Below, piece by piece: positions 4,498 to 33,414 of a stretch of DNA of 64,000 bases; within the stretch, counting starts at the first letter, position 1; each line of letters begins with the position of its first letter. The DNA comes from Diadema antillarum (Eukaryota), in the NCBI RefSeq assembly GCF_040938485.1, contig NW_027271753.1, forward strand, positions 868,001 to 932,000. Direction: 5' to 3'. Position numbers and translations under genes: made by a program. A model generated the notes under the pieces. The model was not told the origin of the DNA, ran no database searches, and saw nothing but the letters and a program-made list of their open reading frames with translations.

Positions 4498-7032
4498 TCA
4501 CATGATGGAGCACCACGAAGTAACGGAACTAGTCTCCGGTACAGCTCTTCTTCGCCGACGATGACGTCGAGGTTCAGTGCATTCACTCGATCTTTGAGTG
4601 TGATGACGATGGCGATGATGATGAGGAGTAGAGTACATGGTTTCCTCGAGGTCACGAGTGACTCGCCTACCATCAGAAGCGGCTTCATCTTGCCTCTTTC
4701 CGGAATTCACCTGTCGGGGACCACCTGCACTTTCATCATGACCTCTTTGAAAGGAGCCGCGATGAGAATCTCCTAAGTGATCTTCACTGTCGTTCTGATA
4801 CCTCGGCGACTCTCGGGTCAGACCTTCGCTTTGTCCTGGAGAACCATCAAACTTCTTACGACGTTTACGCACGTCCATCTTCTCTGGCGAACGTTCGTAA
4901 CGACTCGTTGACCCTCCTCTGGACGTGGAAGGACCTGCTCTACTCTCAAAGTCCAACTCTGAGAAGTCGGGGAACTCCCGTCTCCCTGGTGACGATCGTC
5001 TTGACCCCCGCTGTCGAGATGGAGTGGAGGATGCAATAGGGCGCTTCAAATCTGTGGAGTTAAATGTCATTATGGTTATGATTGTCAGCTTATCGATCTA
5101 AAATGCTATATAGGGGCCTATACAATAGATGTATAGTGTATTTTCAGACATCTATTACACACACACACACACACACACAAATGACGAATATTGTTCAACA
5201 AAATTTTATTAGTTGAAAACAAAACCTAATAGACAAACCACAAAATCACTTTTTATCTTCTTTGTAACATTGCGACTTTCATCAACATTTCTTGGTCTAG
5301 AGTCTATACAAACAATTTCCTTTCTTTGATTTATGTTATTGTTCCCCATCTCATAATCCCTGTTTTCTTCATCCACTTTTCCTCTTCTTCTCCCTCCATC
5401 CGTGTTTGGCATTCCTTTATGCAAGCATTAGATAGCCGCCATAACGCTCTACGAAGCTTTGGTTTTACTGTAATTCCTGCAATTAATTTCTTCTAAAAAG
5501 CATCACGATTAGCCCACTGATAACCCGATAACATTTCTGAGTATATCTTCAGTTTGTGTGGTCAAGTCTGGTAATACTTTTGATGGAATAGACCCTCTCT
5601 ACTTTAAGTTTGGCAATATTTCTGCATTTGATTTCATCTGATTTATTATATCCCGAGTGGTTCCCAATTAACGTGTTCTCTTATTCTTTTCTTCAATCTG
5701 TACGCATATATCGGATGAACACATTGTATGTTTTATTGTCTTGAGAATAAAAAGAAATGACTGTATTTCATTTGTAATATTTAATGCAGGAAATTCCCAA
5801 TAAATTCAATTGAATGGAAAATCGAAGAAAAAAATACATTTCTACATACCATTACTCCCCTTGATGTGTTCCTGTGCCTCCTGGACCCAGTTCTCTAGAT
5901 CTTGGCGGGTCAAATGCTCTCGCCCTTGTCTACTCCCACGACCCTTGGCCTGCCTGGATGGCGACTGACTTCCAGTCCGAGGACGGGGTGGAGGTGATGA
6001 TCGACGCGATGAGACTGGGCGACCCGCATCGAACTCGACCTCTTTTTCAATCATTCTTCTTTCTGGAGGAGGTGACACACGTGGGCTTTCATCCGTTGGA
6101 CGAGAATCGTCAAAGTTCTCAGTCGTCCTTTTCGTGTCACGAACAACGAAATATTCACGGATGTCTTCATCGACCACGGACGAGTTTCTGGTGAAGCGAT
6201 CTGGGGAAGGTGACGGCTCGTGATGGGCGACAGAATGATCAGGCGGCGACACATGCTGGTTGGTGACTGGAATATCGAGCTCCTTCACATTGATGGTCAA
6301 AAGGGGACGCGGTTGCCCCTCGGCTGGCAAGTCTCCGCTGCCGCATAGCGTCAAATTGCAACCATCTTTTGCAAGCTTGCCCAGGTCTATGCTAATGTTC
6401 TGTCTCGAGTCCACATAAACAGGTCCATCTGAGAACATAGTGCGTCCCATATGCGTCTTCTTACTCGAGTGTGAGTTGCGATAAGGTTTTCTGGGGGAGC
6501 GTACTGCGGTCTGACGAGGTGGACGAGGTAAAGTCACTTGGCGACTTGGCGATTTGCCACGAGATGCTGCTCGACTTGATCGAGCACTCCTCGGCGAGCT
6601 AAGCCGAGAGGATCGCCGACTCGATCGACGACTACGTGATGATGCCCGAGATGGAGCTCGGCTTGGCCGGCTGCTTCGCCGCGGAGAGCTAAGTCTGCTC
6701 GACGGACGGCGCGACTTTCGTCGTGCTGACTTCGACAGCGATGTAGCATGACTTGGCTGTCTGCGTCTCCTTTCTGTTGGAGAATTCATTCGAGATGAGG
6801 GCCGGCTCGAACGTGGGCTGTTCGGAAGGATGTACAAATGTTGCGATATCACTTCAAGGAGGTGTTCACCGATTCCATGCACGGCCAGTAATTCATCTAG
6901 ACTGCTAAAGTTTCCTAGGCGATTTCTTAGGCTCAAAATGCGTCTCGCAAGGGGTTTTGTCATCCCTTCAACCATGGTCAGCTGATCCAAGGCGCAGCTG
7001 TTTATATCCAACCTTCTTCTGGTACAGGGCAT
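4498..7032 (-). CDS. Uncharacterised 578-aa protein, join(5850..7032,4498..5051): ComEA-type HhH domain, R/S-rich basic region, disordered region, C-terminal CaaX (CSIM)
   Basis: ATG at 7032 in an ACC-ATG context. Residues 8-69 (LDINSCALDQLTMVEGMTKPLARRILSLRNRLGNFSSLDELLAVHGIGEHLLEVISQHLYIL) fit the HHH_3/ComEA pattern. Donor AATG|GTATGT at 5850/5849 and acceptor TTTAACTCCACAG|AT at 5052/5051 are both phase 1 and join the two long ORFs in frame (GSN-D-LKRP). The protein ends WCSIM-stop. Confidence 0.8.
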
Positions 7033-8100: not shown

Positions 8101-10078
8101 TTCTTCTTCTTCTGATTAAGTCTGCCTCCTTCAATAGACTGAAGATTCTTGCAGACTGGTGCTATTTACATTATAATACAATTTATTTACAGATATTTAC
8201 AAGCACATAGAAAATTTGACGAAAATACTAGCCACTGTGATCAACCGTTAGACGGTTTCGAAATGATCCCACAGATGGCGCTGAAACAATTTCTGACGAC
8301 AGGGAATTCCAGTTCCTTACAGTTCTTGGGAAGAACGAATGGCGATGCGATTCAGTTCTCGAATATGGTACCTGATAGGAGTGTGGTTGCGAGGCTCTCG
8401 TTAACTGAGTAGCCTGTTTGATGATATAGTCCTGTGCTGAAAGAGGAGTGAGATTATTGTGTATTTTGTACATCATAATTAACCTGTCATTTTCTCTGCG
8501 CTGTTCCAGAGTGGTCCAATTAAGTTCTTGTAGCATTTTGGTGACACTCGAGGTGTTATGGTAGCGATTTAAAGTGAATCGCGCAGCTCTTCTCTGGACC
8601 ATTTCCACTTGGTGGATTAGGTTCTTGGTAGATGGGTCCCAAACTGTGGAAGCATACTCAACAATTGGTCGAACCAATGTTTTGTAAGCTGTGGCTTTAA
8701 CATCAGAAGATTTTATGCGAAGATTGCGTTTTAGAAATGCAAGCACGTTATTGGCTTTATTGACAGTATTGTTGATGTGTTGGGTCCACTTCAAATCAGA
8801 AGTGATGGTTACACCCAAGTACTTCACGGATTCAACAGATTCAAGAGGGGCGTTATTTAGATGATACACGTGTTGCACCTTACTTCTTTTCCTGGATATC
8901 GTCAAAACCTTACATTTATCTGTGTTCAAATCCATCATCCATTTTTTCGCCCAGTCACCAATTTTGTTTAGGTCCTCTTGAAGATTTTGCGTATGATGTT
9001 GATTGTCGATAGTCATGTAAGAAATTGCATCATCAGCAAAAAGGCGAACCTTTGACGCGAGACCATCAGGCAAGTCATTGACGTAAAATAGAAAGAGGCA
9101 AGGCCCAAGAACCGACCCCTGAGGCACTCCAGATCCTACCGCTACTGAAGAAGATTTAATACCATCCAAAACGACCCTCTGACTTCTTCCATTGAGAAAA
9201 CTTTGAATCCATTTCAGATTTTTCCCCCTGATACCGTAGTAGTCCAGTTTACGTAAAAGCCGCTCATGCCCAACCTTGTCAAAAGCTTTTGAAAAATCCA
9301 TGACTATAACATCCGTTTGACGTCCTGCATCCAAGTTCCTATGTAAATCGCTTGTGAAACCAAGTAATTGTTGTTCACATGACATGTTCTTACGGAAGCC
9401 ACATTGCAGGGGGAAAATGATGTTATTTTCGTCCCCGTGCTTCATAATTTTGCTCGCTAAAGCGTGCTCCATTAGTTTACAGCAAATACATGTCAGTTGA
9501 ATGGGGCGGTAGTTTACAGGAGTAGATCGATTACCTTTCTTGTAGACTGGTACAACATTTGCTTCACGCCAATCATTTGGTATTTCACTTAATTCATATG
9601 ACAACCGGAATATATTGCAAAGAATCGGAGCCAGAATTTTTGCCAGCTGCTTCAAGACTCGTGGAGTTATACCATCCGGTCCAGGGGCCTTACATGTCTT
9701 CAAACCACAAAGCAACTTCTCTACACCCTTTGATGTAAACAAAATATCCTCCATTTCTTCAAAGTCTGAGGTTTCCGGTAGTAAGTCATTCGGTATGGGA
9801 GTTTCCTTGGTGAAAACACCTTTGAACTGTTGGTTTAATGCTTCAGCTTTTGCAATTGGATCAGTGATCGTAATACCATCACTTTTCAGTTCTCTTATTC
9901 CTGTATTATCAGTTCTGTTGTGTTTGATGAAGCCCCAAAATCTCTTCATACTCTCAAATTCTGTGGTATCTTCATCGATAGAAAAAAGAGATTCCACATA
10001 ATTCCAATAAGCCCTCCTTAGCTCCTGTTGCAGTGATTTCTTGACTGCTTTCAACTCTTCCTCCAATTGAAAAGGGAC
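8101..10078 (-). mobile_element. 5'-truncated non-LTR retrotransposon (LINE, CR1/L2/jockey-like ORF2) with intact RT domain; endonuclease domain absent
   Basis: Uninterrupted ORF 8228-10093 (GTG start) with KAPGPDGI, YRPIQL, QCGFR, DFSKAFDKV, GVPQGSVLGP, LFADD and C-terminal SFFPRTVRNWNSL motifs. A (GAA)n tail lies at 8101-8112. Candidate 6-bp TSD TACCTC at 8095-8100 and 10079-10084. Confidence 0.95.
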
Positions 10079-10169
10079 TACCTCCTTGATCACACTAAAA
10101 ATTTCAGTGATGCTTCATTGATCAGTGTGAATGGGGAATAGGAAGCTTGTGGTGGCACAACTTCACATC

Positions 10170-32277: not shown

Positions 32278-32786
32278 TTATTCACCACTGTCGAGAACCT
32301 CAGCCTTCTGGACGTGACCGTCTCCGGGATTGTCGAGGTCGACGACGTCATTCGCGTAGTCGGACGCGACCTCTGCTTGAGCAAGTTGAATGGCTCGTAC
32401 CGGGACCCCGACGTCTAAGTCGGCGGCAACCTCAGCAACCTGATCAAAGTCCAGGTCATCGGCAACGTGCTCACCGGCCACTTGTGCCTGGCCCATTTGT
32501 ACAGCGCGAACGGGTGGGACGACGGCGTCCGTTGTCTCAGCCCGCTGTCCTAGGTCGATGACGTCCTTGCATCCATCGGACGTGATGTCGGCCTTGCCTA
32601 GCTGGACGGCTCGGACAGGGGGACTGACGACGGTCTTCAGGTCGTCTGCTCGCTGCTCCAGGTCGTGGACCTGTGGGCCGTGATCGGTGGCGACATCAGC
32701 TTTACCCAGCGTGACAGCTCGCACCGGCGGAGGAATTGTGGGCTGAACTTTGGCTTGGTGTACTTTGGTGAGCGGCTTAGCTTCGA
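32278..32786 (-). CDS. Terminal coding exon of an uncharacterised acidic protein with four ~36-aa repeats (PVRAVxLGxAxV...DL); 5' exon unresolved
   Basis: GC-rich ORF 32278-32832 in AT-rich flanks, with four diverged peptide repeats that vary at synonymous positions. Phase-1 acceptor TCAATTTGTCCTCAG|TC at 32787/32786. Confidence 0.75.
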
Positions 32787-33414
32787 CTGAGGACAAATTG
32801 ATGATATCGGAAAATGGCGATTTAAAAGTCATTATTCGGCTTCTCAGTAACCAATCTTATGTCGGCATATAAGTTTCTGTGTGGATGTTTGTTTCATATC
32901 GCTCATTATGAAAATACCATTCTCAAAAACATTAGTCTTATGACTAGAATCATTGATATAAAAAAGATCAGTTGAGATACAGCTTGTAGATGATGCAGAG
33001 AAGTTAAAGTTAGTGAATCAAAGATTTTTTTGCTTACCTCGAAAACTTGGAAGCTATGATAAAAGTAGCCAGCAGTCGTTAGTAATGTACAGTGCAGTTG
33101 TGCGCCAAGCCATTTTGTTCTCGAAATCGTGGAAATCCGCCCTCTATGTCCGCATGCTTGTAAGTTTGTTGTGGCCAGAAGCTTGTCAGTGAGAGAGCGG
33201 TCTGGAAGCTGACATGCATTAGGAGATCTCGGCATTCGCTGTCTGCATATCTCATTCATCATTTGACATTCAAGAGGACTTATTCATGTTTCAGCAATGT
33301 GTCACAGTATGAACGTCTACATAGCTGTCTACGTCTAGCGGGCTGGAGGTTAATGCATAAAGCAGCTGAGAGGAAAGTTAGTGGTTTGTTACTTATACTG
33401 TTTACCTAAAGTAC

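What the first reader, a model, noticed from the sequence alone, without database searches (positions are those of the whole stretch)
4498..7032. Two 'separate' ORFs splice into one 578-aa HhH-RS-CaaX protein: candidate novel DNA-to-membrane tether
Seen: the 429-aa ORF reads through a consensus donor (AATG|GTATGT, 5850) two codons before its stop. The 190-aa ORF contains an acceptor (CTGAC branch-like site, then TTTAACTCCACAG|AT, 5051). Both are phase 1, giving a 798-bp intron and a continuous frame. The architecture is HhH DNA-binding module, very basic RS/SPR tract, long disordered region, NLS-like RKRRKK, polybasic RRHRRRRR and terminal CSIM. Established: tandem HhH (ComEA/HHH_3) binds DNA without sequence specificity, and CaaX directs prenylation. 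Inference: I know no protein with this combination. It could anchor chromatin or stray DNA to the nuclear envelope or another membrane, functionally like lamin B receptor (RS domain) or the farnesylated Drosophila Kugelkern.
Basis: partly seen in the sequence, partly recalled or inferred. Interest (0 to 1): 0.9.

Follow-up and report, generated by a model that had tools for sequence, protein, structure and literature searches.

The report
Sea-urchin HhH DNA-binding protein with CaaX
The two reading frames are one real two-exon sea-urchin gene, already modelled in RefSeq but never studied, whose protein has a DNA-binding helix-hairpin-helix domain at one end and a conserved lipid-attachment (CaaX) signal at the other, so it probably ties DNA or chromatin to a membrane, most likely the nuclear envelope.

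Summary
The window is Diadema antillarum DNA. On the minus strand, exon 1 (7032-5850), a 798-nt GT-AG phase-1 intron (5849-5052) and exon 2 (5051-4498) give a 578-aa protein ending CSIM. NCBI models for D. antillarum and D. setosum use the same junction. A phase-1 intron sits at the same place in Lytechinus variegatus and in a fourth urchin. An uninterrupted, transcript-like contig from another urchin encodes the whole protein.

Residues 7-66 are a Pfam HHH_3 domain (E 7e-13). The model superposes on ComEA at 1.0 Å, and the closest solved sequence is EEPD1. The rest is a basic, Ser/Arg/Pro-rich disordered chain with a few conserved short blocks.

All four lineages are only about 40% identical, yet all end in W-C-S-[I/V]-x (CSIM, CSVL, CSIA). 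That points to a functional prenylation signal. dN/dS is about 0.3.

An exhaustive profile search found full-length relatives only in sea urchins. None is characterised, and I found no paper on them.

Membrane tethering of DNA or chromatin is plausible but only inferred. The nuclear envelope is the likeliest site. The RKRRKK motif and the polybasic patch are not conserved.

The parts
4498..7032 (-). Whole coding region of the two-exon gene (578 aa, pI about 11.3, 16% Arg, 16% Ser, 9% Pro)
   Evidence: Identical to NCBI D. antillarum model P0002 apart from one 84-nt piece, and 95% identical to D. setosum P0001.
5850..7032 (-). Exon 1 (coding part), 1183 nt, aa 1-394 plus the first base of codon 395
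   Evidence: The start MPCTRR is conserved as MP[CNK]TR[RK] in all orthologues.
5052..5849 (-). 798-nt phase-1 intron: GTATGT donor, CTGAC about 37 nt upstream of the CACAG acceptor. AT-rich, and holds an (AC)11 microsatellite at 5157-5178.
   Evidence: Homologous phase-1 introns occur in L004 (Lytechinus, 2605 nt) and L002 (482 nt).
4498..5051 (-). Exon 2 (coding part), 554 nt including the stop at 4498-4500, aa 395-578
   Evidence: Purifying selection on this exon between Lytechinus and L002, dN/dS 0.39.
6835..7014 (-). (HhH)2 / HHH_3 domain, aa 7-66. Hairpins are EGMTKP and HGIGEH. It is the only confidently folded part.
   Evidence: Pfam PF12836 E 6.8e-13, 49 bits against cut-off 27, found in all 7 family members. 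AlphaFold pLDDT about 90. Foldseek gives ComEA 8dss at rmsd 1.0 Å over 64 columns and 2duy at TM 0.85. By sequence the closest solved chain is EEPD1 9yi2, E 8e-12.
6451..6822 (-). Arg/Ser/Pro basic tract, aa 71-194, with SPxR/SPRK motifs. Predicted disordered.
   Evidence: 36 RS/SR dipeptides and 8 S/TPx[KR] sites in the whole protein, and similar counts in every orthologue.
6504..6587 (-). In-frame 84-nt GT…AG piece inside the RS tract (aa 149-176). Removed in NCBI's D. antillarum model (550 aa) and kept in the D. setosum model. Possible exitron or annotation artefact.
6274..6426 (-). Conserved block I, aa 203-253: GPVxVDSxQNISIDLGKLAKDGCNLTLC…PLLTINVKELD. A weakly predicted small strand-helix-strand unit of unknown role.
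   Evidence: Alignment. pLDDT 52-75. No Pfam or Atlas match.
6112..6189 (-). Conserved block II, aa 282-307: RNSSVVDEDIREYFVVRDTKRTTENF
   Evidence: Alignment.
5854..5913 (-). Conserved helix at the end of exon 1, aa 374-393: L[ST]RxD[IL]ENW…
   Evidence: Alignment. Predicted helix, pLDDT 65-83.
4978..5040 (-). Conserved P-x-A-[ST]-S-T-P motif followed by a basic cluster with SP sites, aa 399-419. The only positionally conserved NLS-like patch.
   Evidence: Alignment (RRKKR, KRER at this place in L001 and L002).
4852..4869 (-). RKRRKK, aa 456-461. A classical monopartite NLS pattern, not conserved outside Diadema.
4546..4626 (-). His/Arg-rich tail, aa 537-563 (HHHRHRHH … RRHRRRRR). The H/R richness is conserved, but a net positive charge is not.
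4501..4515 (-). Invariant Trp plus CaaX box, W-C-S-I-M (aa 574-578), at the exact C-terminus
   Evidence: Orthologues end WCSIM, WCSVL, WCSIA and WCSIA. CSIM is the farnesylated CaaX of human prelamin A (PMC7431821).

Best explanation
This is a real two-exon gene of Diadema antillarum, found so far only in sea urchins. It encodes a 578-aa protein that is very basic and mostly disordered. Three things are shown: an N-terminal ComEA/EEPD1-type (HhH)2 domain; a Ser/Arg/Pro tract rich in S/T-P-x-K/R sites; and a strictly conserved C-terminal W-CaaX box. The mechanism is inferred. The Cys is prenylated: farnesyl where X is M or A, geranylgeranyl where X is L. It is then trimmed and methylated at the ER or nuclear envelope. 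The Trp-prenyl end sits in a membrane. The many basic clusters carry the protein into the nucleus, as happens for lamins, Kugelkern and GFP-NLS-CaaX, so the membrane is most likely the inner nuclear membrane. At the other end, the (HhH)2 domain binds the DNA backbone without sequence preference, helped by the adjoining SPxR/RS tract. Crowding on the membrane adds avidity. The result is a flexible chromatin-to-envelope tether. Phosphorylation of the S/T-P and RS sites by CDK- or SRPK-type kinases would release DNA in mitosis.
For: Gene reality: the splice arithmetic holds. The translation matches NCBI models at the same junction. Intron position and phase are conserved in Lytechinus and L002. 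Contig L001 carries the whole ORF uninterrupted. dN/dS is 0.32 overall and 0.39 in exon 2. HhH domain: Pfam E 6.8e-13, pLDDT about 90, ComEA at rmsd 1.0 Å, EEPD1 at E 8e-12. Prenylation signal: Cys at -4 with a2 = I/V, preceded by an invariant Trp, in four lineages only about 40% identical overall, with unconserved neighbouring residues. CSIM equals the farnesylated prelamin A motif. No TM segment exists (max KD19 0.87), so the CaaX is the only membrane anchor. Nuclear-envelope logic: NLS plus CaaX is enough to act on the nuclear membrane (PMC2947476). The protein has pI 11.3, with an RS tract and basic clusters in every orthologue. A net-basic patch next to the CaaX, the K-Ras plasma-membrane signal, is not conserved. 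Precedent for HhH plus membrane anchor: EEPD1 and TM-anchored ComEA-like proteins.
Against: There is no experimental or expression data for any family member. Prenylation, localisation and DNA binding are all untested. No classical NLS is positionally conserved except a basic patch after the STP motif, and RKRRKK is Diadema-only. Isolated EEPD1 (HhH)2 domains do not bind DNA stably on their own (PMC12988330), so a single (HhH)2 may bind weakly or serve another role. EEPD1, the nearest relative of the domain, sits at the plasma membrane, not the nuclear envelope. Some farnesylated nuclear proteins use the lipid for protein-protein contacts rather than membranes (own knowledge: CENP-E, CENP-F, Spindly).
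Confidence: 0.4

Rival explanations
1. The protein is prenylated but works outside the nucleus, on the plasma membrane or endomembranes. There the HhH/basic part would bind nucleic acid or acidic lipids or proteins, as myristoylated EEPD1 does at the plasma membrane or K-Ras4B does with farnesyl plus a polybasic patch.
For: The closest solved sequence relative of the HhH domain is EEPD1, which lipid anchors hold at the plasma membrane and which was not seen in the nucleus in that study. Diadema has RRHRRRRR 12 residues before the Cys. No classical NLS is conserved in position.
Against: The tail is not net-basic in L002 (9 K/R against 9 D/E) or in L001, so a K-Ras-type second signal is not conserved. 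There is no second Cys near the CaaX for palmitoylation. A pI 11.3 protein with an RS tract and many R/K clusters is expected to be imported into the nucleus (inference).
Confidence: 0.2
2. The farnesyl group is a protein-protein targeting handle rather than a membrane anchor, and the protein acts on chromosomes or in nuclear bodies. Examples would be a mitotic chromosome or kinetochore factor, or an SR-like speckle or RNA-binding protein, with the HhH binding DNA or RNA.
For: RS tracts and His-rich runs are known speckle-targeting features (own knowledge). NCBI auto-names the Lytechinus copies SRSF4-like and SRRM2-like. HHH_3-type domains also occur in RNA-associated proteins such as Tex, and a related HhH fold occurs in TEFM and in chromokinesin KIF22. 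There are 8-12 CDK-consensus S/TPx[KR] sites per orthologue.
Against: No member has an RRM or any other RNA-processing domain, so the SR-factor names rest on composition only. The invariant Trp next to the prenyl-Cys fits insertion at a membrane interface (inference). There is no coiled coil or known kinetochore motif.
Confidence: 0.15
3. The joined model is an annotation artefact. The two ORFs would then be separate genes or a decaying pseudogene, and the CaaX would be a coincidence.
For: No RNA-seq reads could be inspected here. The donor exon side (ATG|GT) and the polypyrimidine tract are not ideal. NCBI's two Diadema models differ over an 84-nt internal piece.
Against: Four urchin lineages keep both halves, the same phase-1 intron position and the W-CaaX end. 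An uninterrupted 595-aa ORF lies on contig L001. dN/dS is below 0.4 in both exons.
Confidence: 0.03

Closest known systems
[quoted passage not shown]
   Same: Its (HhH)2 domains are the closest solved sequence match to this HhH (9yi2, E 8e-12), with the same G-x-T first hairpin and G-[IV]-G second hairpin. It is also a lipid-anchored HhH protein (N-myristoyl plus palmitoyl at the plasma membrane; PMC5321112).
   Different: EEPD1 has two (HhH)2 units plus a dimeric EEP domain and a Gly2 myristoylation site. This protein has one (HhH)2, no EEP domain, starts MPC with no Gly2, and carries its lipid signal (CaaX) at the opposite end after about 500 disordered residues.
ComEA (bacterial competence DNA receptor; founding HHH_3 family)
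   Same: Same fold: 8dss at rmsd 1.0 Å and 30% identity, 2duy at TM 0.85. In Gram-positive bacteria, ComEA is a membrane-anchored, sequence-independent dsDNA binder (own knowledge). The ComEA-like hits of the profile search carry N-terminal hydrophobic anchors.
   Different: ComEA is bacterial and extracytoplasmic, is anchored by a TM helix, and has no RS tract and no CaaX. No orthology is implied.
Drosophila Kugelkern and B-type lamins / prelamin A (farnesylated nuclear-envelope proteins)
   Same: They combine nuclear import signals with a C-terminal CaaX. CSIM is identical to prelamin A's motif. Kugelkern is similar in size (570 aa), largely unstructured and restricted to one lineage.
   Different: There is no IF rod or Ig-fold (lamins) and no long coiled coil (Kugelkern). 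Neither lamins nor Kugelkern has an HhH domain. No sequence relationship was seen in the exhaustive search.
Lamin B receptor (LBR) N-terminal region and sea-urchin sperm histone SPKK tails
   Same: Both have a basic RS or S-P-K/R-K/R tract that binds DNA or chromatin and is switched off by phosphorylation (own knowledge). This protein has 8-12 S/TPx[KR] sites and 29-54 RS/SR dipeptides per orthologue.
   Different: LBR is anchored by eight TM helices and has a Tudor domain. The sperm histones have histone folds. Neither is present here.
SR splicing factors (SRSF4, SRRM2), the names NCBI's pipeline gave the Lytechinus copies
   Same: Arg/Ser-rich composition only.
   Different: There is no RRM or other splicing domain. 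SR factors have neither an HhH domain nor a CaaX.

Membership tests
HHH_3 / ComEA-type (HhH)2 domain (PF12836) | Profile match above Pfam's gathering score | tested here: met
   49 bits against cut-off 27, E 6.8e-13, aa 7-66 covering profile positions 5-64 of 65. All 7 family members match.
HHH_3 / ComEA-type (HhH)2 domain (PF12836) | Five-helix (HhH)2 fold with two G-h-G-type hairpins | tested here: met
   AlphaFold pLDDT about 90 for aa 5-70. Foldseek gives ComEA 8dss at rmsd 1.0 Å and 2duy at TM 0.85. Hairpins GMT and GIG are seen in the sequence.
HHH_3 / ComEA-type (HhH)2 domain (PF12836) | Sequence-independent dsDNA binding | not testable with these tools
   Needs EMSA or anisotropy. Caveat: isolated EEPD1 (HhH)2 domains bind poorly on their own.
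CaaX prenylated proteins | Cys exactly four residues from the C-terminus, an aliphatic a2, and an X that selects FTase (M, A, S, Q) or GGTase-I (L) | tested here: met
   CSIM in Diadema, CSVL in L001, CSIA in Lytechinus (two copies) and L002. The motif is conserved although the flanks are not.
CaaX prenylated proteins | Actual prenylation, -aaX cleavage and carboxymethylation | not testable with these tools
   Needs an in vitro FTase assay, metabolic labelling or mass spectrometry.
EEPD1 orthologue | Two (HhH)2 units followed by an EEP (DNase I-like) domain | tested here: not met
   One HHH_3 hit only, and no EEP family hit at E up to 1.
EEPD1 orthologue | N-terminal Gly2 myristoylation and Cys palmitoylation site | tested here: not met
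   The protein starts MPCTRR, so there is no Gly2.
SR splicing factors (SRSF family) | One or two N-terminal RRMs plus a C-terminal RS domain | tested here: not met
   No RRM in any of the 7 members. Only the RS-rich composition is shared.
Lamins | Intermediate-filament rod and lamin-tail Ig fold ahead of the NLS and CaaX | tested here: not met
   No Pfam filament or LTD hit. The only predicted helix outside the HhH is 20 residues long.
Kugelkern-like farnesylated INM proteins | Coiled coil plus NLS plus CaaX; nuclear-membrane localisation dependent on the CaaX (PMC2947476) | tested here: inconclusive
   CaaX is present. Basic NLS-like clusters are present but poorly conserved in position. No long coiled coil is predicted. 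Localisation cannot be tested here. Sequence homology to Kugelkern was not tested directly, because no Kugelkern sequence was fetched.
Lamin B receptor | Tudor domain, RS domain and an eight-TM sterol reductase body | tested here: not met
   No TM segment (max 19-residue Kyte-Doolittle mean 0.87) and no Tudor or ERG4/ERG24 hit.

The most novel reading that the evidence does not exclude
Sea urchins have a lineage-restricted third class of prenylated nuclear-envelope protein, after lamins and Kugelkern. It would contact DNA directly through an (HhH)2 domain and an SPxR/RS tract, and insert a Trp-farnesyl end into the inner nuclear membrane. That makes it a one-polypeptide, phospho-switchable chromatin-to-envelope tether. 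It could matter for rapid envelope reassembly in cleavage divisions or on sperm chromatin at fertilisation.
Probability: 0.33. Interest if true: 0.7.

Novelty: new variant of a known kind. Interest (0 to 1): 0.5.

Why it matters
Proteins that link chromatin to the nuclear envelope are normally either integral membrane proteins (LBR, LEM-domain proteins acting through BAF) or lamins. A soluble, lipid-anchored protein with its own DNA-binding fold would be a minimal, easily engineered form of such a tether. Sea-urchin eggs and embryos are a classic system for nuclear-envelope assembly, so it could be tested there directly by mRNA injection, a Cys-to-Ser mutant and farnesyltransferase inhibitors. 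The finding also adds a third, independent pairing of the ComEA-type HhH module with a membrane anchor: a TM helix in ComEA, myristoyl plus palmitoyl in EEPD1, and CaaX here. That hints at a recurrent design. On the practical side, the Lytechinus copies are misnamed in public databases as splicing-factor-like on composition alone.

Tried and rejected
1. Word-index homologue searches with P0003 (whole length) and with the conserved middle block of P0001 returned only the query or the Diadema proteins. Low-complexity RS words swamp the index. This says nothing about absence elsewhere.
2. ESM Atlas feature searches gave only generic HHH_3 clusters for exon 1 (score 0.68). For the middle block they gave nothing credible (at most 0.67, structural TM at most 0.33).
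3. Pfam scans of exon 2 and of all orthologues found no second domain.
4. Literature searches for HhH + CaaX + nuclear envelope, for prenylated DNA-binding INM tethers, for the Lytechinus accessions and for the SRA run of L001 turned up no description of this protein.
5. The SR-splicing-factor reading was rejected because there is no RRM.
6. EEPD1 orthology was rejected because there is no EEP domain, only one (HhH)2 and no Gly2.
7. A hidden TM anchor was rejected.
8. A K-Ras-type polybasic second signal and the RKRRKK NLS were rejected as family features because they are not conserved.
9. dS between Diadema and the other lineages is saturated, so only the Lytechinus-L002 pair gave usable dN/dS.
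10. The species behind L001, L002 and P0004 could not be determined. DNA for P0004's contig was not retrievable.
Full report
**What is in the sequence.**
- On the minus strand, an ATG at 7032 in a good Kozak context (ACACCATGC) opens a frame that runs to 5850.
- There the sequence reads AATG|GTATGT, and the frame stops two codons later.
- A second frame (5070-4498) contains CTGAC about 37 nt upstream of TTTAACTCCACAG|AT. The first exon base after that acceptor is 5051.
- Exon 1 is 1183 nt and exon 2 is 554 nt. The intron is 798 nt, GT-AG and phase 1.
- The joined frame gives 578 aa with a single terminal stop. The junction reads …HIKGSN-D-LKRPIASS… and the end reads …SWCSIM.
- GC is 52-55% in the two exons and 36-40% in the intron and flanks.
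The "429-aa ORF" is a mechanical TTG-started ORF with 35 extra N-terminal codons.

**Is it a real gene?**
- A protein search with exon 1 returned two NCBI models.
- P0002 (Diadema antillarum, 550 aa, "uncharacterized protein") is identical to my joined translation except that it also removes an in-frame 84-nt GT…AG piece (window 6587-6504) inside the RS tract.
- P0001 (D. setosum, 579 aa) is 95% identical, keeps that piece and has the same exon junction.
- The window is therefore D. antillarum DNA, and the splice is already in RefSeq.
- An exhaustive profile search of 1.8 billion representative proteins found only three further relatives that match well beyond the HhH domain:
  - P0003: 595 aa, from an SRA assembly.
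  - P0006: Lytechinus variegatus XP_041461435. A second copy, P0152 / XP_041461732, lies 1.1 Mb away.
  - P0005: an exon-1-only call.
- P0004, a 278-aa exon-1-like fragment, was already known.
- P0003 sits on a 2142-nt contig with short UTR-like flanks and no interruption. This is what a spliced transcript looks like, though I could not confirm the library type.
- In the Lytechinus genome (L004) the NCBI model has a phase-1 GT-AG intron of 2605 nt at the homologous codon. In contig L002, from another urchin, a phase-1 GT-AG intron of 482 nt at the same place joins exon 1 to an exon ending WCSIA.
- Between Lytechinus and L002, dN/dS is 0.32 overall: 0.25 in the HhH, 0.18 in the RS tract and 0.39 in exon 2.
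- The joined gene model is as secure as it can be without looking at reads.

**Architecture.**
- Pfam finds one domain, HHH_3 (PF12836), at aa 7-66: E 6.8e-13, 49 bits against a cut-off of 27. It is the only domain in all seven family members.
- AlphaFold2 on the seven-sequence alignment gives pLDDT about 90 for aa 5-70 and under 50 for 412 of 550 residues.
- Two stretches are intermediate. One is a small strand-helix-strand unit over conserved block I (pLDDT 52-75). The other is a 20-residue helix over the conserved L[ST]RxD[IL]ENW motif at the end of exon 1 (pLDDT 65-83).
- Foldseek places the folded part on ComEA (8dss, rmsd 1.0 Å over 64 columns, 30% identity; 2duy, TM 0.85) and on Tex.
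- By sequence the closest solved chain is human EEPD1 (9yi2, E 8e-12). It matches both of EEPD1's (HhH)2 units.
- There is no TM segment.
- The protein has pI 11.3, with 16% Arg, 16% Ser and 9% Pro.
- Each orthologue carries 29-54 RS/SR dipeptides and 8-12 S/T-P-x-K/R sites.

**What is conserved and what is not.** The four lineages (Diadema, L001, and the Lytechinus/L002 pair) are about 40% identical to one another. The conserved features are:
- the start MP[CNK]TR and the HhH domain;
- the RS/SPxR character of aa 71-194;
- block I, GPVxVDSxQNISIDLGKLAKDGCNLTLC…PLLTINVKELD;
- block II, SSVVDEDxREYxVxRDTKRxTENF;
- the ENW helix;
- P-x-A-[ST]-S-T-P followed by a basic cluster at the start of exon 2;
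- a His/Arg-rich tail;
- the exact C-terminus W-C-S-[IV]-x.

The endings are CSIM, CSVL, CSIA and CSIA. The Cys at -4 and the Trp at -5 are invariant, while the 15 residues before them are not alignable. That is the signature of a used CaaX box. CSIM is the farnesylated motif of human prelamin A (PMC7431821). From established prenyltransferase specificity, X = M or A directs farnesylation and X = L directs geranylgeranylation.

RKRRKK is Diadema-only. The tail is strongly net-basic in Diadema (10 K/R against 3 D/E in the last 45 residues) but neutral in L002 (9 against 9).

**How it most likely works.**
- Shown: a single polypeptide with a ComEA/EEPD1-type (HhH)2 domain at the extreme N-terminus and a conserved prenylation signal at the extreme C-terminus. 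About 500 disordered, basic, phosphorylatable residues lie between them, and there is no other membrane anchor.
- Inferred:
  1. The Cys is prenylated and processed at the ER or nuclear envelope.
  2. The basic clusters and RS tract drive nuclear import. As with lamins, Kugelkern and even GFP-NLS-CaaX (PMC2947476), the lipid then holds the protein on the inner nuclear membrane. The invariant Trp would help insertion at the membrane interface.
  3. The HhH domain plus the adjacent SPxR/RS tract binds DNA without sequence preference.
  4. CDK- or SRPK-type phosphorylation of the many S/T-P and RS sites releases DNA in mitosis.
- Weakest links:
  - Localisation. EEPD1, the nearest relative of the domain, is held at the plasma membrane by its lipids (PMC5321112).
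  - DNA affinity. EEPD1's isolated (HhH)2 pair does not bind DNA stably; avidity from several units is needed (PMC12988330). Membrane crowding and the basic tract would have to supply that avidity here.
- I give the full chain about 0.4. Prenylation alone I put at about 0.75, and the gene model above 0.95.

**Rivals.**
- A plasma-membrane or endomembrane role in the manner of EEPD1 or K-Ras (0.2). The unconserved polybasic patch and the absence of a palmitoylatable Cys weaken this.
- Farnesyl as a protein-protein handle on chromosomes, kinetochores or speckles (0.15). There is no RRM, coiled coil or known motif to support it.
- An annotation artefact (0.03). Four-lineage conservation all but excludes this.

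**Comparison with what is known.**
- The protein is a member of the HHH_3 domain family and, by sequence criteria, of the CaaX protein class.
- It is not an EEPD1 orthologue: no EEP domain, one (HhH)2 and no Gly2.
- It is not an SR splicing factor (no RRM), whatever the automatic names of the Lytechinus copies say.
- It is not a lamin and not LBR.
- It resembles Kugelkern in logic (a lineage-restricted, largely unstructured nuclear protein with a CaaX) but shares no detectable sequence and lacks the coiled coil.
The concept, however, has precedents: an HhH DNA-binding module joined to a membrane anchor occurs in ComEA (TM helix) and in EEPD1 (myristoyl plus palmitoyl).
- I found no paper on this family.

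**Limits.**
- The exhaustive search prints only its best 150 hits, and bacterial multi-HhH proteins filled that list down to 88 bits. A weakly scoring single-HhH orthologue in other echinoderm classes or in hemichordates could have been hidden. "Echinoid-restricted" therefore means "found only there so far".
- I could not see RNA-seq reads, expression data or the species behind three of the contigs.
- The status of the 84-nt internal piece (exitron or annotation artefact) is open.

**Verdict.** The gene is already modelled, though uncharacterised and in Lytechinus misnamed. I class it as a new variant of known kinds (lipid-anchored HhH proteins; NLS-CaaX nuclear proteins). Interest is 0.5.

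Noticed in passing
window 8228-10093 (-): A 621-aa ORF with a reverse-transcriptase domain (Pfam RVT_1, E 2e-36). It is a non-LTR retrotransposon copy lying about 1.2 kb upstream of the HhH-CaaX gene on the same strand.
   Followed up: partly
window 6504-6587 (-): An in-frame 84-nt GT…AG piece inside the RS tract. NCBI's D. antillarum model removes it (550 aa) and the D. setosum model keeps it (579 aa). It could be an exitron or alternative isoform, or a pipeline artefact.
   Followed up: partly
window 5157-5178: An (AC)11 microsatellite inside the 798-nt intron.
   Followed up: no
L004 and L005 (Lytechinus variegatus CM031018.1, about 48.05 and 46.95 Mb): Two copies of the gene lie about 1.1 Mb apart on one chromosome, with different gene spans (4.2 and 7.2 kb). 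Both end WCSIA. They are auto-named SRSF4-like and SRRM2-like although neither has an RRM.
   Followed up: partly
proteins P0007-P0151: The proteins read from the non-echinoid hits of the profile search (16 of 145 inspected) are bacterial-type proteins with 2-7 tandem HHH_3 units. Most of those have an N-terminal hydrophobic anchor, and one (P0007) has an EEP-like C-terminal domain reminiscent of EEPD1's layout.
   Followed up: no
window 32278-32832 (-): A 184-aa ORF that another first-stage note describes as four ~36-aa PVRAV repeats. I did not examine it.
   Followed up: no
conserved block I, window 6274-6426 (-): Two N-x-S/T sequons (NIS/NVS and NLT) are conserved in block I across urchins, although the protein has no signal peptide or TM segment. 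This is probably coincidental to a beta-strand motif, but it is unexplained.
   Followed up: no
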